A DNA stretch of 64,000 nt from Macrostomum hystrix. Lineage: Eukaryota; Animalia; Platyhelminthes. A program made the position numbers and the translations under genes. Where the stretch lies: assembly GCA_950097015.1 (NCBI GenBank), contig CATNEN010000034.1:5146001-5210000 (forward strand), given 5' to 3'. Positions 8,850 through 49,325 of the stretch are shown here, in pieces (positions within the stretch are counted from its first letter, which is position 1; each line of letters begins with the position of its first letter). Below the pieces are notes generated by a model that was not told where the DNA came from, searched no databases, and was given only the letters and a program-made list of their open reading frames with translations.

Positions 8850-9106
8850 CTGTTAGTGTCGGCGTTTTTGTTTCATCATTTAGGCGCGCTTTATCTACTT
8901 TAAGTAGCGTGCGGGTATTCTAAAAAATGTTCGATAAATCGTAGAAGATCGCTCAAGGTTAAGTGGTTGTGTCGCAAAGTGTCCGGCTCTCGCTCTGTGG
9001 TTGCGTAACTTATCCCTGTGAGTAGGTGTGCTCAGGGGCCAGCGGAATGAGTAAAAAAACTGCGCTAAAAGCAATTGAAAATGAAATACATAGCCAGCCA
9101 ACTCAC

Positions 9107-9572
9107 TGGAATCGTTGAGTCCTGTGTAGATAAATACTCCCTGCACTGGCTGTCTGATCTTGAAGTCCACAGCCCAGGCCGGGATGGCGACTTCCGCGTT
9201 GCTAAGGACATCACACGAGTGCCTAGCAACCAGGCCGTCGACCGCCTTGCTGGATGGCGGATCCTCCTGCCAGCTGTCTCCACTGCCAAGATGTCGCTTC
9301 CGGTGCTTGCCGCCCGAAGCGTCTCCGCCACTGCTGCCATCGTTGACATAGGCATTTTTACCGTAAGCCAGGTTACCCTGGCAACGCGTGGCATTGTTGA
9401 CCCGAAAGTAGCCGGGACCGCAGGCACCACGGTGCGGGCAGCCGTAGACGCCGGCCCGCATGGCGATGCGATTGTGCCAGGAGTCCGGGTGGAAGCGAAC
9501 GTAGCGAGCCACGAACGGCTTGTTGAGATAGTGCACCCGCTCGGTGTTGCGGTCCATGTTGCCGCCGAATAT
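9107..9572 (-). CDS. Same gene, exon 6: end of F5/8C domain 2 (IFGGNMDRNTERVHYLNKPFVARYVRFHPDSWHNRIAMRAGVYGC) and start of FTP-like domain (NLAYGKNAY...SSKAVDG...C...PAWAVDF)
   Basis: Acceptor CAAAG| at 9573/9572 phase 0; donor A|GTGAGT at 9107/9106 phase 1; overlaps ORF 8895..9557. Confidence 0.9.
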
Positions 9573-13497: not shown

Positions 13498-13573
13498 AAG
13501 TACGGGAAGTTGTCATTTCACATAAAGTAGATCTTATAAAAACAAAGCTTCAAATTTTAAGAACTTTTTTTAC

Positions 13574-13746
13574 CTTGGGACTCAGGTGAGCGGCGTCCTT
13601 GTAATAGGTCCAGATGTTGCTGTCGTTACTGTAAGCCACCTTGTAGGCCGTGACCCAGGAGTCCCTAGATCCATCGCCTCTGCCCTTGGTGACCAGACCT
13701 GTGACCATTGTTGGTGGTCCAAGATCCATTTGGAGCCACTGGAGAG
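13574..13746 (-). CDS. Discoidin/F-lectin gene exon 5: LQWLQMDLGPPTMVTGLVTKGRGDGSRDSWVTAYKVAYSNDSNIWTYYKDAAHLSPK
   Basis: WLQxDLG, VT, GR and WVT.YKV.YS.D are F5/8C hallmarks. Acceptor TACCAG| 13747/13746 phase 1; donor AAG|GTAAAA 13574/13573 phase 0. Confidence 0.92.
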
Positions 13747-13774
13747 CTGGTATTGGAAGGCACGGGGTTATGTT

Positions 13775-14245
13775 CATAATTATGAAAATGGTCATAGTGA
13801 CTGATATGCTCATAATTATGAAAATGGTCATAGTGACTGATATGCTCATAATTATGAAAATGGTCATAGTGACTGATATGCTCATAATTATGAAAATGGT
13901 CATAGTGACTGATATGCTCATAGTTATGAAAATAGTCATAGTGACTGATATGCTCATAATTATGAAAATGGTCATAGTGACTGATATGCTCATAATTATG
14001 AAAATGGTCATAGTGACTGATATGCTCATAGTTATGAAAATAGTCATAGTGACTGATATGCTCATAATTATAAAAATGGTCATAGTGACTGATATGCTCA
14101 TAATTATAAAAATGGTCATAGTGACTGATATGCTCATTATTATAAAAATGGTCATAGTGACTGATATGCTCATAATTATAAAAATGGTCATAGTGACTGA
14201 TATGCTCATAATTATAAAAATGGTCATAGTGACTGATATGCTCAT
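13775..14245. repeat. 36-bp intronic tandem repeat CATAATTATGAAAATGGTCATAGTGACTGATATGCT
   Basis: Direct reading; 12-aa period in the ORF track. Confidence 0.95.
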
Positions 14246-14771: not shown

Positions 14772-15786
14772 CTCTCAGATCCGCAGTCTCACACATCCCC
14801 AGTGTCACAGATACGCAGTCTCACAGATCCGCAGTCTCACACATCCCCAGTGTCACAGATCCCCAGTCTCACACATCCCCAGTGTCACAGATACGCAGTC
14901 TCACAGATCCGCAGTCTCACACATCCCCAGTGTCACAGATCCCCAGTCTCACACATCCCCAGTGTCACAGATACGCAGTCTCACAGATCCGCAGTCTCAC
15001 ACATCCCCAGTGTCACAGATACGCAGTCTCACAGATCCGCAGTCTCACACATCCCCAGTGTCACAGATACGCAGTCTCACAGATCCGCAGTCTCACACAT
15101 CCCCAGTGTCACAGATCCCCAGTCTCACACATCCCCAGTGTCACAGATACGCAGTCTCACACATCCCCAGTGTCACAGATATGCAGTCTCACACATCCCC
15201 AGTGTCACAGATACGCAGTCTCACACATCCCCAGTGTCACAGATCCCCAGTCTCACACATCCCCAGTGTCACAGATACGCAGTCTCACACATCCCCAGTG
15301 TCACAGATATGCAGTCTCACACATCCCCAGTGTCACACATCCCCAGTGTCACAGATCCGCAGTGTCACAGATCCGCAGTCTCACACATCCCCAGTGTCAC
15401 AGATACGCAGTCTCACAGATCCGCAGTCTCACACATCCCCAGTATCACAGATCCCCAGTCTCACACATCCCCAGTGTCACAGATCCCCAGTCTCACACAT
15501 CCCCAGTGTCACAGATCCCTAGTTTCACACATCCCCAGTGTCACAGATCCGCAGTCTCACACATCCCCAGTGTCACAGATACGCAGTCTCACAGATCCGC
15601 AGTCTCACACATCCCCAGTGTCACAGATCCCCAGTCTCACACATCCCCAGTGCCACAGATCCGCAGTCTCACACATCCCCAGTCTCACAGATCCGCAGTG
15701 TCACAGATCCGCAGTGTCACAGATCCCCAGTCTCACACATCCCCAGTGTCACAGATCCCCAGTGTCACACATCCCCAGTCTCACAC
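14772..15786. repeat. Intronic composite 16-bp minisatellite (CACAGATCCGCAGTCT / CACACATCCCCAGTGT variants)
   Basis: Direct reading of alternating 16-mer variants. Confidence 0.95.
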
Positions 15787-18024: not shown

Positions 18025-18572
18025 CACTCTCCTCTCTAACTCACTCTCTCCTCTCTACGTCACTCTCTCTCCTCTCTACCTCACTCTCTCCTCTCTACCT
18101 CACTCTCTCTCCTCTCTACCTCACTCTCTCTCTCCTCTCTACCTCTCTCTCTCCTCTCTAGCTCACTCTCTCTCCTCTCTACCTCTCTCTCTCCTCTCTA
18201 CCTCTCTCTCTCCTCTCTACCTCACTCTCTCCTCTCTACCTCTCTCTCTCCTCTCTAGCTCACTCTCTCTCCTCTCTACCTCTCTCTCTCCTCTCTACCT
18301 CTCTCTCTCCTCTCTACCTCACTCTCTCCTCTCTACCTCTCTCTCTCCTCTCTACCTCACTCTCTCCTCTCTACCTCTCTCTCTCCTCTCTACCTCACTC
18401 TCTCCTCTCTACCTCTCTCTCTCCTCTCTACCTCACTCTCTCCTCTCTACCTCTCTCTCTCCTCTCTACCTCTCTCTCTCCTCTCTACCTCACTCTCTCC
18501 TCTCTACCTCTCTCTCTCTCTCCTATCTATCTCACTCTCTCTCTCCTCTCTAGCTCACTCTCGCTCATCTCT
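18025..18572. repeat. CT-rich (polypyrimidine) minisatellite CTCTCTACCTCACTCTCTC; resumes at 18863-19040
   Basis: Direct reading. Confidence 0.93.
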
Positions 18573-18696
18573 CAGTTCAGCACCGGCATCTCGTACGACC
18601 GAGTCAGTGCCACGGAGTTGAGTGAGTATGGATTGAGTTGCTGGGCGCTGCCGAATCGATTACGATATGTTGAGATTGAAAGCTGGATTTGAACAA

Positions 18697-18806
18697 GCGC
18701 CTATAGCCAAATGGCTGGAGCGCTGGGCTAGACTCTACTGATGAGCTCCAATAAGAGCGAAACGCGTCTGGAGTTGCCTTGGTTCGAATCCGGATTTCAA
18801 TTTTTT
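18697..18806 (+). mobile_element. tRNA-derived / SINE-like Pol III unit surrounding the hammerhead (A box, B box, T6)
   Basis: GCGCCTA-TAGCCAAATGG (A box 18704-14 at tRNA positions 8-18); GGTTCGAATCC 18781-91 (perfect B box); TTTTTT 18801-06. Confidence 0.6.
18731..18775 (+). ncRNA. Minimal type I hammerhead ribozyme (predicted GUC cleavage after 18768), antisense to the host intron
   Basis: Stem I GACTCTA(18731-37)/TGGAGTT(18769-75); core CTGATGA 18738-44; stem II GCTC-CAATAA-GAGC 18745-58; GAAA 18759-62; palindromic ACGCGT stem III; GTC triplet 18766-68. Confidence 0.88.
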
Positions 18807-18862
18807 CGATACATATCGCAATCGATTCCAACATTAGATTTTTTTAATTCAATGGGCAGTGT

Positions 18863-19040
18863 CCTCTCTCCTCTCTCCCGCTCTCTCTCCCTCTCTCCCT
18901 CTCTCTACCTCACTCTCTCTCTACCTCACTCTCTCTCCTGTCTACCTCTCACTCTGCTCTCTACCTCACTCTCTCTTTCCTCTCTACCTCACTCACTCTC
19001 TCCTCTCGTCTCTCCCCTCTACCCCTCTCTCCTCTCTACA
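18863..19040. repeat. Continuation of the CT-rich minisatellite
   Basis: Same CTCTCTACCTCACTCT units as 18025-18572. Confidence 0.88.
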
Positions 19041-19689
19041 TCATTAATTCCCTCACCTATCCTATCTACCAAACTCTCCTGTATGCGTAATAAATCTCCT
19101 CTCCCTTCTCTTTCCAGTCTCCCATTTGAAACATTATCCCACTTGACTGACTAGCTTTTATCCTGAATTTGGTATCGAATTTTCATTCTAAAGATTAGCC
19201 CGCGTGTTACAGAGCGCTGCCTTTACGTTGACAAATTCTTTTAGCATTCGACAAAATATTTTCAAGTGTTGCAACGAGAATTGTGGGACAACGCGAAACT
19301 GGGATTAAAACGGTGCGGACAGACAGTTGATCCCAACTCCCATATCCGGGTTAGAGTGGTTGGGATAAAATTTGAGCTTTTCAGCAACCGGATAGATAGG
19401 ATAAATAAGTAATGATGGGATAAAAATGGGATTAACAGTCTCAGCTAATCTTCAAGAGCTCTCAAATCCTCACATTGCTTTTAGTCTGTAACCACTTAAC
19501 AGCTGTCAGGCAAGCTCAATTAGCTTCTCTATAATCCCAAACTAGTGCATTTAGTCGCTGCTACTTTCTGGTTGGGAAAAATTTAAGAAGCTTATCTTCA
19601 ACATCTTCTGACTAAAAAGGAGTTTCTGGTCGGACAAAAAGTCGGCCTCAAAAAAGCTCGTCAGAAAGTTTACTTTTATAATTAACACA

Positions 19690-21190
19690 CGAGTTGTCTG
19701 TAGAGACTTGTCATCTATGAGTTGTCACATAGATTCTACAGTGAGTTGTTTGTAGTGACTTGTCATCTATGAGTTGTCGCATAGATTCTTCAGTGAGTTG
19801 TCTGTAGTTGTCATCTATGATTTGTCACATAGATTCTACAGTGAGTTGTCTGTAGTGACTTGTCATTGAGTTGTCTGTAATCTATATATTCTACAGTGAG
19901 TTGTCTGTAATCGATAGATTCTACAGTGAGTTGTCAGTAATCTATAGATTCTACAGTGAGTTGTCTGTAATCTATAGATTCTACAGTGAGTTGTCAGTAA
20001 TCTATAGATTCTACAGTGAGTTGTCAGTAATCTATAGATTCTACAGTGAGTTGTCTGTAATCTATAGATTCTACAGTGAGTTGTCAGTAATCTATAGATT
20101 CTACAGTGAGTTGTCTGTAATCTATAGATTCTACAGTGAGTTGTCAGTAATCTATAGATTCTACAGTGAGTTGTCTGTAATCTATAGATTCTACAGTGAG
20201 TTGTCAGTAATCTATAGATTCTACAGTGAGTTGTCTGTAATCTATATATTCTACAGTGAGTTGTCTGTAATCGATAGATTCTACAGTGAGTTGTCAGTAA
20301 TCTATAGATTCTACAGTGAGTTGTCAGAAATCTATAGATTCTACAGTGAGTTGTCAGTAATCTATAGATTCTACAGTGAGTTGTCAGAAATCTAGAGATT
20401 CTACAGTGAGTTGTCAGTAATCTATAGATTCTACAGTGAGTTGTCTGTAATCTATAGATTCTACAGTGAGTTGTCAGTAATCTATAGATTCTACAGTGAG
20501 TTGTCAGAAATCTAGAGATTCTACAGTGAGTTGTCAGTAATCTATAGATTCTACAGTGAGTTGTCAGTAATCTATAGATTCTACAGTGAGTTGTCAGTAA
20601 TCTATAGATTCTACAGTGAGTTGTCAGTAATCTATAGATTCTACAGTAAGTTGTCAGTAATCTATAGATTCTACAGTGAGTTGTCAGTAATCTATAGATT
20701 ATACAGTGAGTTGTCAGTAATCTATAGATTCTACAGTGAGTTGTCAGTAATCTATAGATTCTACAGTGAGTTGTCAGTAAACTATAGATTCTACAGTGAG
20801 TTGTCAGTAAACTATAGATTCTACAGTGAGTTGTCAGTAATCTATAGATTCTACAGTGAGTTGTCAGTAATCTATAGATTCTACAGTGAGTTGTCAGAAA
20901 TCTAGAGATTCTACAGTGAGTTGTCAGTAATCTATAGATTCTACAGTAAGTTGTCAGTAATCTATAGATTCTACAGTGAGTTGTCAGTAATCTATAGATT
21001 ATACAGTGAGTTGTCAGTAATCTATAGATTCTACAGTGAGTTGTCAGTAATCTATAGATTCTACAGTGAGTTGTCTGTAACCTATAGATTCTACAGTGAG
21101 TTGTCAGTAACCTATAGATTCTACAGTGAGTTGTCTGTAGTGACTTGTCATCTATGAGTTGTGACATAGATTCGACAGTGAGTTGTCTGT
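19690..21190. repeat. 30-bp intronic tandem repeat AGTGAGTTGTCAGTAATCTATAGATTCTAC
   Basis: Exact 30-bp phase across the 60-nt lines 19921-21121. Confidence 0.97.
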
Positions 21191-22028: not shown

Positions 22029-25000
22029 CTGACACTAAAGTTAACATTATAGCTGACACTAGCTGACACTAAAGTTGACATTATTGCTGACACTAGCTGA
22101 CACTAAAGTTGACATTATTGCTGACACTAGCTGACACGAAAGTTGACACTATAGCTGACACTAGCTGACACTAAAGTTGACATTATTGCTGACACTAGCT
22201 GACACGAAAGTTGACACTATAGCTGACACTAGCTGACACTAAAGTTGACATTATAGCTGACACTAGCTGACACTAAAGTTGACACTATAGCTGACACTAG
22301 CTGACACTAAAGTTGACATTATTGCTGACACTAGCTGACACTAAAGTTGACACTATAGCTGACACTATAGCTAACACTATAGCTGACACTAAAGTTGACA
22401 CTATAGCTGACACTAGCTGACACTAAAGTTGACACTATAGCTGACACTAAAGTTGACACCATAGCTGACACTAGCTGACACTAAAGTTGACACTATAGCT
22501 GACACTATAGCTGACACTATAGCTGACACTAAAGTTGACACTATAGCTGACACTAGCTGACACTAAAGTTGACACTATAGCTGACACTAAAGTTGACACT
22601 ATAGCTGACACTAGCTGACACTAAAGTTGACACTATAGCTGACACTATAGCTGACACTATAGCTGACACTATAGCTGACACTAAAGTTGACACTATAGCT
22701 GACACTAGCTGACACTAAAGTTGACATTATAGCTGACACTAGCTGACACTAAAGTTGACACTATAGCTGACACTAAAGTTGACACTAAAGTTGACACTAA
22801 AGTTGACACTATAGCTGACACTAAAGTTGACACTAAAGTTGACACTAAAGTTGACACTAAAATTGACACTAAAGTTGACACTAAAGTTGGCACTATAGCT
22901 GACACTAAAGTTGACATTATAGTTGACACTAAAATTGACACTAAAGTTGACACTAAAGTTGGCACTATAGCTGACACTAAAGTTGACATTATAGCTGACA
23001 CTATAGCTGACACTAAAGTTGACATTATAGCTGACACTAAAGTTGACACTATAGCTGACACTAGCTGACACTAAAGTTGACTCTATAGCTGACACTATAG
23101 CTGACACTATAGCTGACACTATAGCTGACACTAGCTGACACTAAAGTTGACACTACAGCTGACACTAGCTGACACTAAAGTTGACATTATTGCTGACACT
23201 AGCTGACACTAAAGTTGACATTATTACTGACACTAGCTGACACGAAAGTTGACACTATAGCTGACACTAGCTGACACTAAAGTTGACATTATTGCTGACA
23301 CTAGCTGACACTAAAGTTGACATTATTGCTGACACTAGCTGACACGAAAGTTGACACTATAGCTGACACTAGCTGACACTAAAGTTGACATTATTGCTGA
23401 CACTATAGCTGACACTAAAGTTGACATTATAGCTGACACTAAAGTTGACACTATAGCTGACACTAGCTGACACTAAAGTTGACTCTATAGCTGACACTAT
23501 AGCTGACACTATAGCTAACACTATAGCTGACACTAAAGTTGACACTATAGCTGACACTAGCTGACACTAAAGTTGACACTATAGCTGACACTAAAGTTGA
23601 CACTATAGCTGACACTAGCTGACACTAAAGTTGACACTATAGCTGACACTATAGCTGACACTATAGCTGACACTAAAGTTGACACTATAGCTGACACTAG
23701 CTGACACTAAAGTTGACACTATAGCTGACACTAAAGTTGACACTATAGCTGACACTAGCTGACACTAAAGTTGACACTATAGCTGACACTATAGCTGACA
23801 CTATAGCTGACACTATAGCTGACACTAAAGTTGACACTATAGCTGACACTAGCTGACACTAAAGTTGACATTATAGCTGACACTAGCTGACACTAAAGTT
23901 GACACTATAGCTGACACTAAAGTTGACACTAAAGTTGACACTAAAGTTGACACTAAAGTTGACACTAAAGTTGACACTAAAGTTGACACTAAAGTTGACA
24001 CTATAGCTGACACTAAAGTTGACATTATAGCTGACACTATAGCTGACACTAAAGTTGACATTATAGCTGACACTAAAGTTGACACTATAGCTGACACTAG
24101 CTGACACTAAAGTTGACTCTATAGCTGACACTATAGCTGACACTATAGCTGACACTATAGCTGACACTAGCTGACACTAAAGTTGACACTATAGCTGACA
24201 CTAGCTGACACTATAGCTGACACTAGCTGACACTAGCTGACACTAAAGTTGACATTATAGCTGACACTAGCTGACACTAGCTGACAATATAGCTGACACT
24301 AGCTGACACTAGCTGACACTAAAGTTGACATTATAGCTGACACTAGCTGACATTAAAGTTGACACTATAGCTGACACTAAAGTTGACACTATAGCTGACA
24401 CTAAAGTTGACACTATAGCTGACACTATAGCTGACACTATAGCTGACACTATAGCTGACACTATAGCTGACACTAGCTGACACTATAGCTGACACTATAG
24501 CTGACACTAAAGTTGACACTATAGCTGACACTAGCTGACACTAAAGTTGACACTATAGCTGACACTAAAGTTGACACTATAGCTGACACTAGCTGACACT
24601 AAAGTTGACACTATAGCTGACACTATAGCTGACACTATAGCTGACACTATAGCTGACACTAAAGTTGACACTATAGCTGACACTAGCTGACACTAAAGTT
24701 GACATTATAGCTGACACTAGCTGACACTAAAGTTGACACTATAGCTGACACTAAAGTTGACACTAAAGTTGACACTAAAGTTGACACTAAAATTGACACT
24801 AAAGTTGACACTAAAGTTGGCACTATAGCTGACACTAAAGTTGACATTATAGCTGACACTATAGCTGACACTAAAGTTGACATTATAGCTGACACTAAAG
24901 TTGACACTATAGCTGACACTAGCTGACACTAAAGTTGACTCTATAGCTGACACTATAGCTGACACTATAGCTGACACTATAGCTGACACTAGCTGACACT

Positions 25001-38905: not shown

Positions 38906-39714
38906 AGATAGTGGAGTAGACTATAGTTGGGATAAATAAGAAATTTCCCATACAGGAAGCCTTGCAGGGGAGTCTTATGGGATCTGATGGGCCAAATGCT
39001 TTGGACAATCATTCAAGCTTAGTCACTTGGAGTCACTTGGAGTAGGAGTAAGGCAAAAGTTATATCGCGGGAAACATATTCTTCATTTTTTCAGATAAGA
39101 AAATCAAGGCTTCAGAGCCCCATCTAGTAACAATCAAGTCGTGGAATCTGGCAGCAAATCTCCCAGCCAGCCATCACTCCCTATTGCATTGATCGGTAGC
39201 TTCATAACCCATAGGACTGATCAATCACGGTGGCATCATGCTTCATAATTGTCAGTGCATTGACCTACTAGCCATGTGCAAAGAGGATTAAGCCAAGAAA
39301 TCTAAGGCCTTCTAATAATCCAGACTGCATGAGCTGTCTTGTGCGGGACTCAAAGTTGAGCAGTTAGTCTCATGCAGATTAATAAAATCTCGATTGTCTT
39401 ATCTCGATTGCAGAGTCTTGAACTGGGCATATTTTATTTGAATTCTGTGTGCATTTATCGTATTTGAACTAACTGCCAATCAACCAGCAAACAATCCATC
39501 AATTGTGCCTTAGGATTAAAATTAGTGCCAATGAGGAAGACGTTAAAAGATAAAATAATATCGATTCAAATATTCTTAACAATAATTTGTTTAAGTTCGC
39601 ATAGACAATTTACGAATCATTTTGGACTGTTTCGGCTATTCAAACAAATAAGATGAATTAAAAAGAAACTTATGAATTTGTTCTGGTAAAAATATCTCCC
39701 TAAAATCCTCGCCT

Positions 39715-42700
39715 AAAAATCCTCTCACCGAAATCCTCTCACCGAAATCCTCTCACCGAAATCCTCTCCTCAAAATCCTCTCACTGAAATCCTCTCACCG
39801 AAATCCTCTCAACGAAATCCTCTCACCGAAATCCTCTCACCGAAATCCTCTCACCGAAATCCTCTCACCGAAATCCTCTCACCGAAATCCTCTCACCGAA
39901 ATCCTCTCACTGAAATCCTCTCACCGAAATCCTCTTAACGAAATCCTCTCATTGAAATCCTCTCCTCAAAATCCTCTCACCGAAATCCTCTCACCGAAAT
40001 CCTCTCCTCAAAATCCTCTCACTGAAATCCTCTCATTGAAATCCTCTCACTAAAATCCTCTCATTGAAATCCTCTCCTCAAAATCCTCTCACCGAAATCC
40101 TCTCACCGAAATCCTCTCCTCAAAATCCTCTCACCGAAATCCTCTCCTCAAAATCCTCTCACCGAAATCCTCTCACTGAAATCCTCTCCTCAAAATCCTC
40201 TCACCGAAATCCTCTCCTCAAAATCCTCTCACTGAAATCCTCTCACCGAAATCCTCTCCTCAAAATCCTCTCACCGAAATCCTCTCACCGAAATCCTCTC
40301 ACCGAAATCCTCTCACTGAAATCCTCTCACCGAAATCCTCTCACCGAAATCCTCTCCTCAAAATCCTCTCAACGAAATCCTCTCACCGAAATCCTCTCAC
40401 TGAAATCCTCTCATTGAAATCCTCTCACTAAAATCCTCTCATTGAAATCCTCTCCTCAAAATCCTCTCACCGAAATCCTCTCACCGAAATCCTCTCCTCA
40501 AAATCCTCTCACTGAAATCCTCTCATTGAAATCCTCTCACTGAAATCCTCTCCTCAAAATCCTCTCACCGAAATCCTCTCATTGAAATCCTCTCATTGAA
40601 ATCCTCTCCTCAAAATCCTCTCACCGAAATCCTCTCACTGAAATCCTCTCACCGAAATCCTCTCACTGAAATCCTCTCACTGAAATCCTCTCACTGAAAT
40701 CCTCTCATTGAAATCCTCTCATTGAAATCCTCTCACTAAAATCCTCTCACCGAAATCCTCTCACTGAAATCCTCTCATTGAAATCCTCTCCTCAAAATCC
40801 TCTCACCGAAATCCTCTCACCGAAATCCTCTCCTCAAAATCCTCTCACTGAAATCCTCTCATTGAAATCCTCTCACTGAAATCTTCTCATTGAAATCCTC
40901 TCCTCAAAATCCTCTCACCGAAATCCTCTCACTGAAATCCTCTCACCGAAATCCTCTCACTGAAATCCTCTCCTCAAAATCCTCTCACCAAAATCCTCTC
41001 ACCGAAATCCCCTCAACGAAATCCTCTCACCGAAATCCTCTTCTCAAAATCCACTCACTGAAATCCTCTCACCGAAATCCTCTCACCGAAATCCTCTCAA
41101 CGAAATCCTCTCACTGAAATCCTCTCACGAAATCCTCTCAACGAAATCCTCTCACCGAAATCCTCTCATTGAAATCCTCTCACTGAAATCCTCTCACCGA
41201 AATCCTCTCAACGAAATCCTCTCACCGAAATCCTCTCATTGAAATCCTCTCACTGAAATCCTCTCACCGAAATCCTCTCCTCAAAATCCTCTCACCGAAA
41301 TCCTATCACCGAAATCCTCTCCTCAAAATCCTCTCACTGAAATCCTCTCATTGAAATCCTCTCACTGAAATCCTCTCACCGAAATCCTCTCCTCAAAATC
41401 CTCTCATCGAAATCCTATCACCGAAATCCTCTCCTCAAAATCCTCTCCTCAAAATCCTCTCACTGAAATCCTCTCCTCAAAATCCTCTCACCGAAATCCT
41501 CTCCTCAAAATCCTCTCACCGAAATCCTCTCCTCAAAATCCTCTCACCGAAATCCTCTCACTGAAATCCTCTCCTCAAAATCCTCTCACCGAAATCCTCT
41601 CCTCAAAATCCTCTCACCGAAATCCTCTCCTCAAAATCCTCTCACCGAAATCCTCTCACTGAAATTCTCTCCTCAAAATCCTCTCACCGAAATCCTCTCC
41701 TCAAAATCCTCTCACCGAAATCCTCTCCTCAAAATCCTCTCACCGAAATCCTCTCACCGAAATCCTCTCACCGAAATCCTCTCACTGAAATCCTCTCACC
41801 GAAATCCTCTCACCGAAATCCTCTCCTCAAAATCCTCTCAACGAAATCCTCTCACCGAAATCCTCTCACTGAAATCCTCTCATTGAAATCCTCTCACTAA
41901 AATCCTCTCATTGAAATCCTCTCCTCAAAATCCTCTCACCGAAATCCTCTCACCGAAATCCTCTCCTCAAAATCCTCTCACTGAAATCCTCTCATTGAAA
42001 TCCTCTCACTGAAATCCTCTCCTCAAAATCCTCTCACCGAAATCCTCTCATTGAAATCCTCTCATTGAAATCCTCTCCTCAAAATCCTCTCACCGAAATC
42101 CTCTCACTGAAATCCTCTCACCGAAATCCTCTCACTGAAATCCTCTCACTGAAATCCTCTCACTGAAATCCTCTCATTGAAATCCTCTCATTGAAATCCT
42201 CTCACTAAAATCCTCTCACCGAAATCCTCTCACTGAAATCCTCTCATTGAAATCCTCTCCTCAAAATCCTCTCACCGAAATCCTCTCACCGAAATCCTCT
42301 CCTCAAAATCCTCTCACTGAAATCCTCTCATTGAAATCCTCTCACTGAAATCTTCTCATTGAAATCCTCTCCTCAAAATCCTCTCACCGAAATCCTCTCA
42401 CTGAAATCCTCTCACCGAAATCCTCTCACTGAAATCCTCTCCTCAAAATCCTCTCACCAAAATCCTCTCACCGAAATCCCCTCAACGAAATCCTCTCACC
42501 GAAATCCTCTTCTCAAAATCCACTCACTGAAATCCTCTCACCGAAATCCTCTCACCGAAATCCTCTCAACGAAATCCTCTCACTGAAATCCTCTCACGAA
42601 ATCCTCTCAACGAAATCCTCTCACCGAAATCCTCTCATTGAAATCCTCTCACTGAAATCCTCTCACCGAAATCCTCTCAACGAAATCCTCTCACCGAAAT

Positions 42701-45700
42701 CCTCTCATTGAAATCCTCTCACTGAAATCCTCTCACCGAAATCCTCTCCTCAAAATCCTCTCACCGAAATCCTATCACCGAAATCCTCTCCTCAAAATCC
42801 TCTCACTGAAATCCTCTCATTGAAATCCTCTCACTGAAATCCTCTCACCGAAATCCTCTCCTCAAAATCCTCTCATCGAAATCCTATCACCAAAATCCTC
42901 TCCTCAAAATCCTCTCCTCAAAATCCTCTCACTGAAATCCTCTCCTCAAAATCCTCTCACCGAAATCCTCTCCTCAAAATCCTCTCACCGAAATCCTCTC
43001 CTCAAAATCCTCTCACCGAAATCCTCTCACTGAAATCCTCTCCTCAAAATCCTCTCACCGAAATCCTCTCCTCAAAATCCTCTCACCGAAATCCTCTCCT
43101 CAAAATCCTCTCACCGAAATCCTCTCACTGAAATCCTCTCACCGAAATCCTCTCGCCGAAATCCTCTCCTCAAAATCCTCTCACCGAAATCCTCTCACCG
43201 AAATCCTCTCCTCAAAATCCTCTCACCGAAATCCTCTCGCCGAAATCCTCTCCTCAAAATCCTCTCACCGAAATCCTCTCCTCAAAATCCTCTCACCGAA
43301 ATCCTCTCACTGAAATCCTCTCCTCAAAATCCTCTCACCGAAATCCTCTCACCGAAATCCTCTCACCGAAATCCTCTCCTCAAAATCCTCTCACCGAAAT
43401 CCTCTCCTCAAAATCCTCTCACCGAAATCCTCTCCTCAAAATCCTCTCACCGAAATCCTCTCGCCGAAATCCTCTCCTCAAAATCCTCTCACTGAAATCC
43501 TCTCACCGAAATCCTCTCCTCAAAATCCTCTCACCGAAATCCTCTCCTCAAAATCCTCTCACCGAAATCCTCTCCTCAAAATCCTCTCACCGAAATCCTC
43601 TCACCGAAATCCTCTCACTGAAATCCTCTCACCGAAATCCTCTTAACGAAATCCTCTCATTGAAATCCTCTCCTCAAAATCCTCTCACCGAAATCCTCTC
43701 ACCGAAATCCTCTCCTCAAAATCCTCTCACTGAAATCCTCTCATTGAAATCCTCTCACTAAAATCCTCTCATTGAAATCCTCTCCTCAAAATCCTCTCAC
43801 CGAAATCCTCTCACCGAAATCCTCTCCTCAAAATCCTCTCACCGAAATCCTCTCCTCAAAATCCTCTCACCGAAATCCTCTCACTGAAATCCTCTCCTCA
43901 AAATCCTCTCACCGAAATCCTCTCCTCAAAATCCTCTCACTGAAATCCTCTCACCGAAATCCTCTCCTCAAAATCCTCTCACCGAAATCCTCTCACCGAA
44001 ATCCTCTCACCGAAATCCTCTCACTGAAATCCTCTCACCGAAATCCTCTCACCGAAATCCTCTCCTCAAAATCCTCTCAACGAAATCCTCTCACCGAAAT
44101 CCTCTCACTGAAATCCTCTCATTGAAATCCTCTCACTAAAATCCTCTCATTGAAATCCTCTCCTCAAAATCCTCTCACCGAAATCCTCTCATTGAAATCC
44201 TCTCACTGAAATCCTCTCACCGAAATCCTCTCATTGAAATCCTCTCACTGAAATCCTCTCCTCAAAATCCTCTCACCGAAATCCTCTCATTGAAATCCTC
44301 TCATTGAAATCCTCTCCTCAAAATCCTCTCACCGAAATCCTCTCACTGAAATCCTCTCACCGAAATCCTCTCACTGAAATCCTCTCACTGAAATCCTCTC
44401 ACTGAAATCCTCTCACCGAAATCCTCTCATTGAAATCCTCTCACTAAAATCCTCTCACCGAAATCCTCTCACTGAAATCCTCTCATTGAAATCCTCTCCT
44501 CAAAATCCTCTCACCGAAATCCTCTCACCGAAATCCTCTCCTCAAAATCCTCTCACTGAAATCCTCTCATTGAAATCCTCTCACTGAAATCCTCTCATTG
44601 AAATCCTCTCCTCAAAATCCTCTCACCGAAATCCTCTCACCGAAATCCTCTCCTCAAAATCCTCTCACCGAAATCCTCTCGCCGAAATCCTCTCCTCAAA
44701 ATCCTCTCACCGAAATCCTCTCCTCAAAATCCTCTCACCGAAATCCTCTCACTGAAATCCTCTCCTCAAAATCCTCTCACCGAAATCCTCTCACCGAAAT
44801 CCTCTCACCGAAATCCTCTCCTCAAAATCCTCTCACCGAAATCCTCTCCTCAAAATCCTCTCACCGAAATCCTCTCCTCAAAATCCTCTCACCGAAATCC
44901 TCTCGCCGAAATCCTCTCCTCAAAATCCTCTCACCGAAATCCTCTCACCGAAATCCTCTCCTCAAAATCCTCTCACCGAAATCCTCTCCTCAAAATCCTC
45001 TCACCGAAATCCTCTCCTCAAAATCCTCTCACCGAAATCCTCTCCTCAAAATCCTCTCACCGAAATCCTCTCGCCGAAATCCTCTCCTCAAAATCCTCTC
45101 ACCGAAATCCTCTCACCGAAATCCTCTCCTCAAAATCCTCTCACCGAAATCCTCTCGCCGAAATCCTCTCCTCAAAATCCTCTCACCGAAATCCTCTCGC
45201 CGAAATCCTCTCCTCAAAATCCTCTCACCGAAATCCTCTCACCGAAATCCTCTCCTCAAAATCCTCTCACTGAAATCCTCTCACGAAATCCTCTCACTGA
45301 AATCCTCTCACCGAAATCCTCTCACCGAAATCTTCTTCTCAAAATCCTCTCACTGAAATCCTCGCACTGAAATCCTCTCACTGAAATCCTCTCACCGAAC
45401 TCCTCTCCTCAAAATCCTCTCACTGAAATCCTCTCATTGAAATCCTCTCACCGAAATCCTCTCCTCAAAATCCTCTCACTGAAATCCTCTCACTGAAATC
45501 CTCTCACTGAAATCCTCTCACTGAAATCCTCTCACCGAACTCCTCTCCTCAAAATCCTCTCACTGAAATCCTCTCATTGAAATCCTCTCACCGAAATCCT
45601 CTCACCGAAATCTTCTTCTCAAAATCCTCTCACTGAAATCCTCGCACTGAAATCCTCTCACCGAAATCCTCTCACCGAAATCCTCTCACCGAAATCTTCT

Positions 45701-45715
45701 TCTCAAAATCCTCAC
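39715..45715. repeat. 6-kb satellite, 14-bp unit AAATCCTCTCACCG (variants ...ACTG, ...ATTG, ...CTCA), with a 1469-bp internal duplication
   Basis: Direct reading; rare variant CCACTCACTG at 41051 and 42520. Confidence 0.97.
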
Positions 45716-49007: not shown

Positions 49008-49325
49008 ATCGCGCAAGCGACTGTTCCTCCCCATGCAACGACTACGGTGACGACCTGACAATGGGAGGCGGCGCCGGTCAGCACGCCTCAGCCGGTTCAG
49101 CTGAAGATCCGAACCAGAAGCGCTATCGCACCGCCTTCAGCCGGGAGCAGCTAGACCGCCTCGAGAAGGAATACCGCCGAGAGTCATACGTGTCGAGGCC
49201 GAGGCGCTGCGAACTCGCCAGCCAGCTGGGCCTACCGGAGGGCACCATCAAGGTGTGGTTTCAGAATCGCCGGATGAAAGACAAACGACAAAGGATTGCT
49301 CAGAGCTGGCCTTATAATCTAGCAG
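49008..49325 (+). CDS. evx: Evx exon 2 containing the complete homeodomain
   Basis: [59 protein letters not shown] is the Eve/Evx signature, followed by SWP. Acceptor CACCAG| 49007/49008; donor G|GTAGGC 49325/49326. Confidence 0.96.

What the first reader, a model, noticed from the sequence alone, without database searches (positions are those of the whole stretch)
18697..18806. Hammerhead nested between Pol III A and B boxes: a tRNA-like gene whose middle is a ribozyme
Seen: GCGCCTA then TAGCCAAATGG fits tRNA positions 1-18 and the A-box consensus TRGCNNARYGG. A perfect B box GGTTCGAATCC starts 6 nt after hammerhead stem I, and TTTTTT follows 10 nt later. The ribozyme occupies the space where the anticodon/variable arms would be. 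Inference: a ~110-nt Pol III transcript that cuts itself between its own internal promoter boxes. It could be a SINE-like/retrozyme monomer (compare the tRNA-related, hammerhead-bearing SM-alpha/Sj-alpha elements of schistosomes) or a source of small or circular RNA. It is not a functional tRNA because the acceptor and anticodon stems do not close.
Basis: partly seen in the sequence, partly recalled or inferred. Interest (0 to 1): 0.9.

Follow-up and report, generated by a model that had tools for sequence, protein, structure and literature searches.

The report
Hammerhead ribozyme inside tRNA-derived repeat
A self-cutting RNA motif really does sit between the two promoter boxes of a decayed tRNA-like sequence, but it is the core of one solitary copy of a very abundant ~300-bp mobile repeat of the known ribozyme-carrying kind, not a stand-alone small RNA gene, and neither transcription nor cutting is shown.

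Summary
These are GCGCCTA, an A box at 18704-14, a canonical type I hammerhead with cleavage at C18768|T18769, an exact B box at 18781-91, and T6 at 18801-06.

It is not a free-standing gene. A DNA run of the same organism covers 18572-18875 at word depths in the thousands to 46,000. This copy differs from the family's majority letters at 8 places, none of which damages the boxes, the ribozyme or the T-run. The scan has met this family on other pieces of this genome at least eight times.

New here:
- **Fold.** The + strand RNA folds (z about -6) into a 48-bp closing helix that buries 10 of the 11 B-box bases. It also forms a hairpin holding the A box, and the hammerhead.
- **Dimer-dependent ribozyme.** Helix III is minimal and palindromic, so efficient cutting should need two copies.
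- **Not a SINE layout.** T6 and about 125 bp of family sequence upstream of the A box do not fit spread by Pol III transcripts.
- **Boxes are not part of the ribozyme module.** The same 26-nt core occurs in 24 metagenome loci with compensated stem I and no boxes.
- **Flanks.** A CT-rich minisatellite flanks the element on both sides, here and in other copies.

Verdict: a new variant of the retrozyme / Sm-alpha kind. Promoter activity is unproven.

The parts
18027..18572 (+). CT-rich 19-bp minisatellite (unit CTCTCCTCTCTACCTCACT) on the 5' side of the element
   Evidence: TRF finds 26.5 copies at 89% match. The 19-mer occurs only at 18027-19045 in the window, always on the + strand. Other family copies also have CT-rich flanks (loose ends of X1 and X3).
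18573..18644 (+). 5' domain of the repeat unit (GA/GT-rich, forms its own small fold)
   Evidence: Covered at word depth 2,700-7,600 in DNA run X3. It forms a separate domain in the fold.
18645..18695 (+). Left arm of the long closing helix / inverted repeat
   Evidence: Inverted repeats 18653-70/18811-28 (94%) and 18675-94/18782-18801 (85%). In the MFE it pairs with 18782-18862: 48 bp including 6 G-U.
18697..18724 (+). tRNA 5'-half-like segment (positions 1 to about 28) holding the A box TAGCCAAATGG (18704-18714); in RNA it forms a hairpin
   Evidence: Sequence. A-box pattern count. Hairpin in the folds. The family majority reads TAGCCTAATGGCTAGAGCGC, which is closer to a tRNA D-arm region.
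18725..18779 (+). Canonical metazoan type I hammerhead ribozyme: outer helix GGGC/GCCT, bulge TA, helix I 7 bp, core, helix II GCTC/GAGC with loop CAATAA, helix III A-CGCG-T; predicted cleavage between C18768 and T18769
   Evidence: Rfam HH9 at 37 bits, E 5e-8. Core pattern unique in the window. Compensatory helix I changes in other families that share the identical core.
18781..18791 (+). B box GGTTCGAATCC (11/11 to the tRNA T-arm consensus); in RNA, 10 of its 11 bases pair with 18685-18694
   Evidence: The only match in the window at up to 1 mismatch. Pair list.
18782..18862 (+). Right arm of the long closing helix, with a small internal hairpin
18801..18806 (+). TTTTTT, a Pol III terminator-type run inside the repeat unit
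   Evidence: Sequence. No family variant is listed here. The 157-nt contig of run X9 ends exactly at 18806.
18864..19045 (+). CT-rich tail / minisatellite on the 3' side, same unit as on the 5' side
   Evidence: Family contigs run on into CT-rich sequence past 18871.

Best explanation
This is one solitary, near-consensus copy (about 97.5% to the family's majority letters) of a very abundant, non-coding repeat of about 300 bp in this animal genome. Earlier notes of the scan call the genome a Macrostomum-type flatworm; I did not verify that.

The core of the repeat is a chimera. The 5' part (positions 1 to about 28, with the A box) and the T-arm part (with the B box) of a tRNA-derived sequence flank a canonical metazoan type I hammerhead. 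The hammerhead replaces the anticodon and variable region.

**Shown**
- The motifs themselves.
- High copy number.
- The family consensus keeps the boxes, the ribozyme and T6.
- The + strand RNA has a strong branched-rod fold.
- The ribozyme core with compensated helix I recurs in unrelated elements.

**Inferred life cycle**
1. The repeat is transcribed on the + strand.
2. Because helix III is only A-CGCG-U, two hammerheads pair through ACGCGU to form the active dimer. They may come from tandem units or from two RNAs.
3. The dimer cuts after C18768.
4. Where two units lie on one transcript, unit-length RNA with 5'-OH and 2',3'-cyclic phosphate ends is released.
5. That RNA can be closed by the tRNA ligase RtcB and copied back into DNA by a reverse transcriptase supplied in trans, as in retrozymes and Sm-alpha.

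A copy made on a circular template would explain the arrangement CT array - unique part - CT array.

The A and B boxes most likely descend from a tRNA-type Pol III promoter. If still active (my odds about 0.4), they would give only a ~110-nt RNA (about 18693-18805) that ends at T6. That RNA cannot carry the whole unit, so at best the boxes make a small ribozyme-bearing RNA rather than the transposition template.
For: - **Motifs and statistics:**
- **Family membership and abundance:** in DNA run X3, 55 contigs were laid and summed word depth reached 45,882. The eight places where this copy departs from the majority are 18642, 18709, 18717, 18725, 18792, 18819, 18844 and 18845. Only 18709 falls in a box, at an N position of the A-box consensus.
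- **Whole unit with flanks:** a 332-nt contig of X1 spans 18568-18875 with CT-rich sequence at both ends.
- **Fold:** 18640-18835 gives -79.7 kcal/mol, z -6.76. The whole unit gives -112.9, z -5.9 on the + strand against -88.0 on the - strand, with 6 G-U pairs in the 48-bp helix. 72% of bases are paired and GC is 47%. This matches the 'highly self-paired', low-GC description of metazoan retrozymes (PMC7229834, PMC4918200).
- **Helix III type and dimer requirement:** PMC4209133 and PMC7229834; the ACGCGU self-duplex is -8.9 kcal/mol.
- **Ribozyme under structural constraint:** window GACTCTA/TGGAGTT, family M1 CGATACG/CGTATC and family M3 CACAGTG/CACTGT all flank the identical 26-nt core.
- **Precedent for internal small-RNA-type promoters in hammerhead repeats:** PMC2220036 (schistosome Pol III promoter; newt satellite 2 snRNA-type promoter).
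Against: - At this locus there is one hammerhead only, so no unit-length or circular RNA can come from it alone.
- No joints, molecule ends or circular permutations were seen. Only assembled contigs were available, and these cannot show them.
- No target-site duplication can be read in the CT arrays.
- No reverse transcriptase partner was identified.
- T6 inside the unit and about 125 bp of family sequence upstream of the A box argue against Pol III-driven spread. The reason the boxes are kept is therefore open.
- The family is so uniform that equal conservation of boxes and neighbouring bases says little about selection.
- Tandem copies elsewhere in the genome are known to me only from earlier unchecked notes.
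Confidence: 0.7

Rival explanations
1. One reading: the A and B boxes are an active internal Pol III promoter in many copies. The product is a ~110-nt RNA (about 18693-18805) that is cut at 18768/18769 into a ~76-nt 5' piece with a cyclic phosphate and a ~37-nt 3' piece with an oligo-U tail. These serve as small RNAs, or as trans partners that complete dimeric hammerheads on longer family transcripts.
For: - Exact B box, A box with all the tRNA invariants, and T6 10 nt after the B-box arm.
- A-to-B gap of 66 bp, which is within what type 2 promoters tolerate (established knowledge, not tested here).
- The family majority keeps all three elements.
- X3 depth rises about threefold at about 18693-18704, where a Pol III start would lie.
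- The 157-nt contig from a probable RNA run (X9) ends exactly at the last T of T6.
- A functional Pol III promoter is reported for the schistosome hammerhead repeat (PMC2220036).
Against: - The X9 contig starts at 18650, about 45 nt upstream of any A-box-directed start. The tool warns that DNA can be present in RNA libraries.
- The X1 contig reads through T6.
- A monomeric hammerhead with this helix III cleaves poorly (6% in 1 h for the axolotl analogue, PMC7229834).
- The 112-nt RNA alone is not unusually stable (z -1.44).
- Contig ends are assembly break points, not RNA ends.
Confidence: 0.35
2. The boxes are relics without promoter function. An ancestral tRNA-derived sequence was recruited as structural material. 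The B box is now kept because it is one strand of the 48-bp closing helix, and the A box because it sits in a hairpin. The RNA comes from read-through or another promoter.
For: - 10 of 11 B-box bases pair with 18685-18694, and the A box lies in hairpin 18696-18724.
- T6 and a second T-run lie inside the unit.
- Family sequence extends 125 bp upstream of the A box.
- The identical ribozyme core functions in 24 other loci with no box within 400 nt.
- An RNA-library contig of a third organism (X11) has the hammerhead closed directly by an 18-bp helix with no boxes beside it.
Against: - An 11/11 match to the B-box consensus, together with an A box that keeps every invariant tRNA position, is more than pairing alone requires.
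- The left arm pairs through G-U at two B-box positions, so pairing would allow drift that is not seen.
- The precedent in schistosomes is a working Pol III promoter.
Confidence: 0.35
3. The ribozyme belongs to a fragment of a Penelope-like element's terminal repeat (pLTR), and the boxes are incidental.
For: - Penelope-like elements carry type I hammerheads that act as dimers and coexist with retrozymes (PMC4209133, PMC7229834).
- A 2026 preprint (10.64898/2026.07.22.740005) argues that animal retrozymes are non-autonomous partners of these elements.
Against: - PLE minimal hammerheads have helix II of 7-8 bp, helix I of 4-5 bp and no helix III (PMC4209133). Here helix II has 4 bp, helix I has 6-7 bp with the canonical bulge, and helix III is present.
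- None of the 20 longest ORFs of the window shows a reverse transcriptase or GIY-YIG domain.
- The joint chance of the boxes is about 1e-6.
Confidence: 0.03
4. The unit is a miniature inverted-repeat DNA transposon, and its arms are the 18-42-bp inverted repeats.
For: Inverted repeats at 94% and 85% complementarity around the core; small size; high copy number.
Against: - The family-conserved sequence extends well outside the inverted repeats on both sides, 18572-18652 and 18829-18875.
- The + strand folds 25 kcal/mol better than the - strand through G-U pairs, which points to an RNA-level constraint.
- No target duplication is visible.
Confidence: 0.04

Closest known systems
Sm-alpha / Sj-alpha SINE-like hammerhead repeats of schistosomes (Ferbeyre et al. 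1998; Laha et al. 2000)
   Same: A flatworm repeat of about 330 bp in very high copy number. It carries a canonical type I hammerhead with a short helix III together with tRNA-derived sequence bearing Pol III promoter boxes. A functional Pol III promoter is reported for it (PMC2220036), and it is regarded as a retrozyme-like non-autonomous element (PMC4918200, PMC6155905).
   Different: - In Sm-alpha the tRNA part is a full, contiguous tRNA-Gln that tRNAscan-SE calls as a tRNA or pseudogene (PMC2770079, PMC4918200), so the ribozyme lies outside it. Here the tRNA-like sequence is split and the ribozyme sits between the A and B boxes; ARAGORN sees no tRNA.
- The helix II and loop sequences differ, and the best Rfam family is HH9, not Hammerhead_1.
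- T6 follows the B box.
- The flanks are CT-rich arrays.
- I could not obtain the Sm-alpha sequence or the 1998 paper, so homology was not tested.
Metazoan non-LTR retrozymes (Cervera and de la Pena 2020, PMC7229834)
   Same: A type I hammerhead in a non-coding repeat of 150-450 bp with GC below 50%. The RNA is predicted to be highly self-paired (72% here). Helix III is of the dimer-dependent type, like axolotl HHR_Amex1 (one base pair plus a palindromic tetraloop).
   Different: - The defining tandem arrangement is not met at this locus, which has one hammerhead.
- No circular RNA evidence.
- That literature describes no tRNA-type promoter boxes around the ribozyme (no mention of tRNA genes or Pol III).
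- A variable CT-rich minisatellite is part of the unit.
Newt satellite 2 (Epstein and Gall 1987; Coats et al. 1994)
   Same: A hammerhead-bearing repeat that carries its own internal small-RNA-gene-type promoter. Its hammerhead is active as a dimer (PMC2220036, PMC6155905).
   Different: The newt promoter is of the snRNA type and is used by Pol II. Here the boxes are of the tRNA (type 2 Pol III) kind and flank the ribozyme.
Amniote/Xenopus intronic hammerhead HH9 (Rfam RF02275)
   Same: The core and helix II/loop 2 are nearly identical (CUGAUGAGCUCCAAnAAGAGCGAAAC), and the helix I architecture with an internal loop is the same.
   Different: HH9 is a conserved single-copy intronic ribozyme with a stable helix III. 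Here helix III is 5 nt shorter, the score (37 bits) is under the curated 52, and the motif is part of a high-copy repeat.
tRNA-derived SINEs
   Same: A and B boxes kept while the cloverleaf has decayed; high copy number; a simple-repeat tail.
   Different: The tRNA-like head is not at the 5' end of the unit (125 bp of family sequence precede it). A T6 terminator lies inside the unit. The boxes are separated by a ribozyme. No LINE-derived tail was recognised.

Membership tests
Hammerhead ribozyme, canonical metazoan type I | Catalytic core CUGANGA ... GAAA ... UH cleavage triplet in type I order | tested here: met
   CUGAUGA 18738-44, GAAA 18759-62, GUC|U 18766-69.
Hammerhead ribozyme, canonical metazoan type I | Helix I about 6 bp with an internal loop, helix II 4 bp, helix III 1-2 bp with a 2-4 nt palindromic loop (PMC4209133) | tested here: met
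   Helix I has 6-7 bp plus a UA(G) bulge and an outer 4 bp. Helix II is GCUC/GAGC. Helix III is A-CGCG-U.
Hammerhead ribozyme, canonical metazoan type I | Reaches the curated score of an Rfam hammerhead family | tested here: not met
   Best match is HH9 at 37 bits against 52 (E 5e-8); nothing at gathering threshold. The shortfall comes from the 5-nt shorter helix III and the outer helix.
Hammerhead ribozyme, canonical metazoan type I | Helices supported by compensatory change | tested here: met
   Three element families with the identical 26-nt core have fully different, still complementary helix I strands. They are not copies of this family.
Hammerhead ribozyme, canonical metazoan type I | Self-cleavage activity | not testable with these tools
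   Needs in vitro transcription or RNA end mapping. The contigs show no ends.
Non-LTR retrozyme | Type I hammerhead within tandem repeats of 150-450 bp (dimers to multimers) | tested here: not met
   One hammerhead in 64 kb. Tandem pairs elsewhere in the genome are reported only in unchecked earlier notes.
Non-LTR retrozyme | Low GC (<50%) and a highly self-paired monomer RNA | tested here: met
   GC 47%, 72% of bases paired, z -5.9.
Non-LTR retrozyme | Expressed as linear and circular unit-length RNA | tested here: inconclusive
   Contigs of probable RNA runs hold the element (X1, X9), but no joints or ends are listed, and contigs cannot show them.
Sm-alpha / Sj-alpha | Full tRNA-like (tRNA-Gln) domain with A and B boxes | tested here: not met
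   Boxes are present, but the tRNA-like sequence is split by the ribozyme. ARAGORN finds no tRNA and Rfam gives no tRNA match at E up to 10.
Sm-alpha / Sj-alpha | Sequence homology to the Sm-alpha consensus | not tested
   No Sm-alpha sequence was available in any tool, and PMC108972 is not held.
tRNA-type (type 2) Pol III transcription unit | A box, B box and downstream T-run in the right order on one strand | tested here: met
   18704-14, 18781-91 and 18801-06; the only such combination in the window. The A-B gap is 66 bp, longer than in intron-less tRNA genes.
tRNA-type (type 2) Pol III transcription unit | Transcribed by Pol III | not testable with these tools
   Needs ChIP, inhibitor sensitivity or 5'/3' end mapping.
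tRNA-derived SINE | tRNA-related head at the 5' end of the unit and no internal Pol III terminator | tested here: not met
   Family coverage starts at about 18572, 125 bp upstream of the head. T6 and T7 lie inside the unit.
Penelope-like element pLTR hammerhead | Minimal hammerhead (helix II 7-8 bp, no helix III) next to an RT / GIY-YIG ORF | tested here: not met
   Helix II has 4 bp and helix III is present. The 20 longest ORFs show no RT or endonuclease domain.

The most novel reading that the evidence does not exclude
The family is a 'Pol III retrozyme'. Each copy would carry a working tRNA-type internal promoter wrapped around a dimer-dependent hammerhead. Thousands of dispersed copies would then release ~110-nt ribozyme RNAs that cut themselves between their own promoter boxes. 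These RNAs might pair in trans with longer family transcripts to trigger their processing into unit-length or circular RNA. This would be a self-contained transcription-plus-processing cassette not described for retrozymes or for Sm-alpha.
Probability: 0.25. Interest if true: 0.65.

Novelty: new variant of a known kind. Interest (0 to 1): 0.42.

Why it matters
How animal retrozyme-type repeats are transcribed is largely unknown. Only two cases have a defined internal promoter: schistosome Sm-alpha (Pol III) and newt satellite 2 (snRNA type).

A family in which the ribozyme sits between the A and B boxes would be a compact natural cassette, with promoter, ribozyme and terminator in 110 nt. It would make several questions directly testable:
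- whether Pol III drives hammerhead repeats outside schistosomes;
- whether dimer-dependent hammerheads are activated in trans;
- whether tRNA-derived parts recruit tRNA-processing or ligation enzymes.

If the boxes are relics, the case still shows how a tRNA-derived sequence was rebuilt into the closing helix of a rod-like ribozyme RNA. For this particular locus the result is ordinary: one more solitary copy of a family the scan has already met repeatedly.

Tried and rejected
- **Rfam at gathering thresholds:** nothing in the window or in four metagenome loci.
- **ARAGORN:** no tRNA in the window. With the ribozyme removed in silico (340 variants, relaxed threshold) it gave only 'tRNA-???' calls that use the upstream inverted-repeat arm as the acceptor stem. 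I judged these artefacts.
- **Other copies in the window:** none.
- **Reads:** only Logan contigs were available, so the decisive end and joint tables came back empty.
- **5'-truncated copies:** loose ends in X3 at 18754-18765 lie 4-15 nt upstream of the cleavage site rather than at it. I do not claim they derive from cleaved RNA.
- **Metagenome scan:** gave 24 loci, but none belongs to this family. Smith-Waterman scores of the flanks against family M1 are at the shuffled level, so they cannot test whether the boxes are conserved within the family. I had first misread a MAFFT alignment as showing decayed boxes in M1; rejects that.
- **Dimer cofold of the 55-nt ribozyme:** gave a strand-swapped duplex rather than a clean double hammerhead. 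Only the ACGCGU self-duplex energy is used.
- **Organism:** the protein-atlas look-up of a GPCR ORF gave no usable taxon. 'Macrostomum-type flatworm' rests on earlier notes only.
- **Literature:** Ferbeyre 1998 and Hammann 2012 are not held. No paper combines Macrostomum with hammerhead ribozyme, or hammerhead with A box, B box and SINE.
- **Bacterial-type promoter and terminator scan:** empty and irrelevant for this genome.

Full report
**Observation.**
- GCGCCTA lies at 18697-18703.
- TAGCCAAATGG lies at 18704-18714. It fits the A-box consensus and the invariant tRNA positions 8, 10, 14, 15, 18 and 19.
- The hammerhead core CTGATGAGCTCCAATAAGAGCGAAAC lies at 18738-18763.
- Helix I is GACTCTA (18731-37) paired with TGGAGTT (18769-75). 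After a TA bulge it is extended by GGGC/GCCT.
- Helix II is GCTC/GAGC with loop CAATAA. Helix III is reduced to A-CGCG-T.
- The cleavage site lies between C18768 and T18769.
- The exact B box GGTTCGAATCC is at 18781-18791 and TTTTTT at 18801-18806.

Rfam aligns 18720-18791 end to end with Hammerhead_HH9 (37 bits, E 5e-8). This is under the curated 52 bits because helix III is 5 nt shorter, and nothing passes a gathering score.

The core pattern is unique in the window, with 0.08 expected by chance. The B box is unique. Of 8 loose A boxes and 1 B box in both strands, only this pair forms an A...B...T-run unit. I estimate the joint chance at about 1e-6. ARAGORN finds no tRNA.

**It is a repeat copy, not a gene of its own.**
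Laying contigs of four public runs on 18561-18875 gave 55 contigs from a DNA run of the same organism (X3). Summed word depths ran from about 2,700 to 45,900 across 18572-18875.

The family's majority letters differ from this copy at eight places: 18642, 18709, 18717, 18725, 18792, 18819, 18844 and 18845. That is about 97.5% identity.
- None of the eight touches the ribozyme core, the B box or T6.
- 18709 is an N position of the A box.
- With the majority letters the 5' part reads TAGCCTAATGGCTAGAGCGC. This is even closer to a tRNA D-arm region; the comparison rests on my own knowledge of tRNA sequences.

The family is so uniform, however, that this says little about selection.

Earlier notes of the scan report the same arrangement at eight or more other loci of this genome. 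They are unchecked and I use them only as leads. There is no second copy in this window.

**Anatomy of the unit.**
The unique part runs from about 18573 to 18863. It is flanked on both sides by the same CT-rich 19-bp minisatellite, which occurs nowhere else in the window and always on the + strand. A 332-nt contig of run X1 and loose ends of X3 show CT-rich sequence on both sides of other copies too. The CT array therefore belongs to the element or is its preferred target.

As RNA, the + strand folds far better than shuffles. Region 18640-18835 gives -79.7 kcal/mol, z -6.76. The whole unit gives -112.9, z -5.9.

The fold has three parts:
- A 48-bp closing helix pairs 18645-18695 with 18782-18862 and includes 6 G-U pairs.
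- A hairpin at 18696-18724 contains the A box.
- The hammerhead occupies 18725-18779.

Ten of the eleven B-box bases pair with 18685-18694. The - strand folds 25 kcal/mol worse, which points to an RNA-level constraint on the ribozyme strand. The unit has 47% GC and 72% of its bases paired, matching the description of metazoan retrozyme RNAs (PMC7229834, PMC4918200).

**The ribozyme type.**
By the definitions in PMC4209133 this is the canonical metazoan type I hammerhead: helix I about 6 bp with an internal loop, helix II 4 bp, and helix III 1-2 bp capped by a small palindromic loop. It is not the minimal Penelope-type motif, which has helix II of 7-8 bp and no helix III.

Such a helix III prevents efficient cleavage by a single motif. 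Two motifs pair through the palindrome to form the active dimer (here ACGCGU, -8.9 kcal/mol). The axolotl analogue cleaved 6% in an hour as a monomer (PMC7229834). 'A transcript that cuts itself' is therefore expected to be inefficient unless two units or two RNAs meet.

**Related sequences elsewhere.**
An exact-match scan of metagenome contigs with the 26-nt core returned 24 loci. They fall into three element families.
- Two families have intact hammerheads whose helix I strands are entirely different yet complementary: CGATACG/CGTATC and CACAGTG/CACTGT, against GACTCTA/TGGAGTT here. The GCTA bulge region is conserved and the helix III loops are palindromic. This is good comparative support for the ribozyme fold.
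- None of the 24 loci has an A or B box within 400 nt.
- The flanks of the largest family show no similarity to this element beyond chance.

An RNA-library contig of a third organism (X11) has the same hammerhead (36 of 41 bases) closed directly by an 18-bp helix, with no boxes in the 30 nt on either side. The ribozyme module and the tRNA-derived halves are therefore separable, and their nesting is a feature of this family.

**Does the Pol III unit work?**
In favour:
- The boxes, their order and T6.
- A roughly threefold rise of DNA depth at about 18693-18704.
- A 157-nt contig from a probable RNA run of a near-identical organism (X9) that ends exactly at 18806.
- A functional Pol III promoter reported for the schistosome hammerhead repeat (PMC2220036).

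Against:
- That contig begins at 18650, too far upstream for an A-box-directed start.
- The X1 contig reads through T6.
- Contig ends are assembly break points.
- The repeat unit extends 125 bp upstream of the head and about 60 bp plus the CT tail beyond T6. A Pol III transcript could therefore not carry the whole unit to a new site.
- The B box has a second reason to be conserved, namely pairing.

I put the odds that the boxes are active at about 0.4. If they are, the product is a ~110-nt ribozyme RNA, not the transposition template.

**Most likely mechanism.**
Shown:
- a high-copy, non-coding, strongly structured unit;
- a constrained, dimer-type hammerhead;
- a tRNA-derived frame.

Inferred:
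1. The + strand is transcribed.
2. Dimeric hammerheads cleave after C18768.
3. Where two units share a transcript, unit-length RNA with 5'-OH and cyclic phosphate ends is released.
4. The tRNA ligase closes it into a circle.
5. A reverse transcriptase supplied in trans copies it back into DNA.

Copying a circular template for a little more than one turn would give exactly the observed CT array - unique part - CT array. This locus, with one hammerhead, is probably a dead-end copy.

**Comparison with known systems.**
The closest is Sm-alpha/Sj-alpha of schistosomes: a flatworm repeat of about 330 bp with a type I hammerhead, tRNA-derived sequence and a Pol III promoter. The difference I could document from the literature is that schistosome repeats hold a full tRNA-Gln, which tRNAscan-SE recognises (PMC2770079, PMC4918200). 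Here the tRNA-like sequence is split and the ribozyme replaces its middle.

The element works like a non-LTR retrozyme, but the defining tandem arrangement is not met at this locus and circles are not shown.

Newt satellite 2 is a second precedent for an internal small-RNA-type promoter in a hammerhead repeat (PMC2220036). A Penelope pLTR is excluded for this locus.

I found no paper describing a hammerhead between A and B boxes, or any hammerhead in Macrostomum. The library lacks most subscription journals.

**Verdict.**
- Observation: confirmed.
- Interpretation: partly supported.
- Novelty: a new variant of a known kind.
- Interest: moderate. The arrangement is neat and apparently undescribed, but function is untested and the scan has already found the family many times on other DNA of this genome.

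Noticed in passing
window 39703-45713: A 6-kb C-rich satellite of about 215 copies of a 28-bp unit (14-bp subunit AAATCCTCTCACCG), 87% matching. It lies a few kb upstream of the Evx homeobox exon.
   Followed up: no
window 49076-49290 (+): An exon encoding an Evx-type homeodomain ([19 protein letters not shown]...[13 protein letters not shown]), moderately diverged from vertebrate EVX.
   Followed up: partly
window 8895-9557 and 13550-14245 (-): ORF pieces with F5/8 type C (discoidin) domain matches (E 9e-8 and 6.5e-13): exons of a minus-strand gene. I did not settle whether the hammerhead element lies in an intron of that gene, antisense, as another first-reader note says.
   Followed up: partly
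window 15000-15785, 19867-21139, 22029-23000: Further long minisatellites (units of 32, 30 and 34 bp, 89-96% matching) surround the element. The region is unusually rich in tandem arrays.
   Followed up: no
L002, L003, L007-L010, L012, L015, L017-L022, L024 (metagenome Ga0126336): A dispersed element family of about 260-350 bp from an unidentified eukaryote. It has the identical 26-nt hammerhead core, helix III AC-AACGUU-GU and an internal T6, but no tRNA-type boxes.
   Followed up: partly
L001, L004, L006, L013, L014, L023 (ENA metagenome assemblies): The same locus was assembled six times. Its hammerhead core is intact, but the 3' strand of helix I no longer pairs (3 bp), so it is probably a decayed ribozyme related to the intact one in L005/L011/L016.
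   Followed up: partly
window 18754-18765 (run X3): Several genomic contigs match the element only from 4-15 nt upstream of the cleavage site onward, with unrelated or CT-rich sequence before. Depth rises 3-4 fold from about 18759. This may reflect 5'-truncated copies linked to the ribozyme, or contigs of other tRNA-related repeats attracted by the B box.
   Followed up: no
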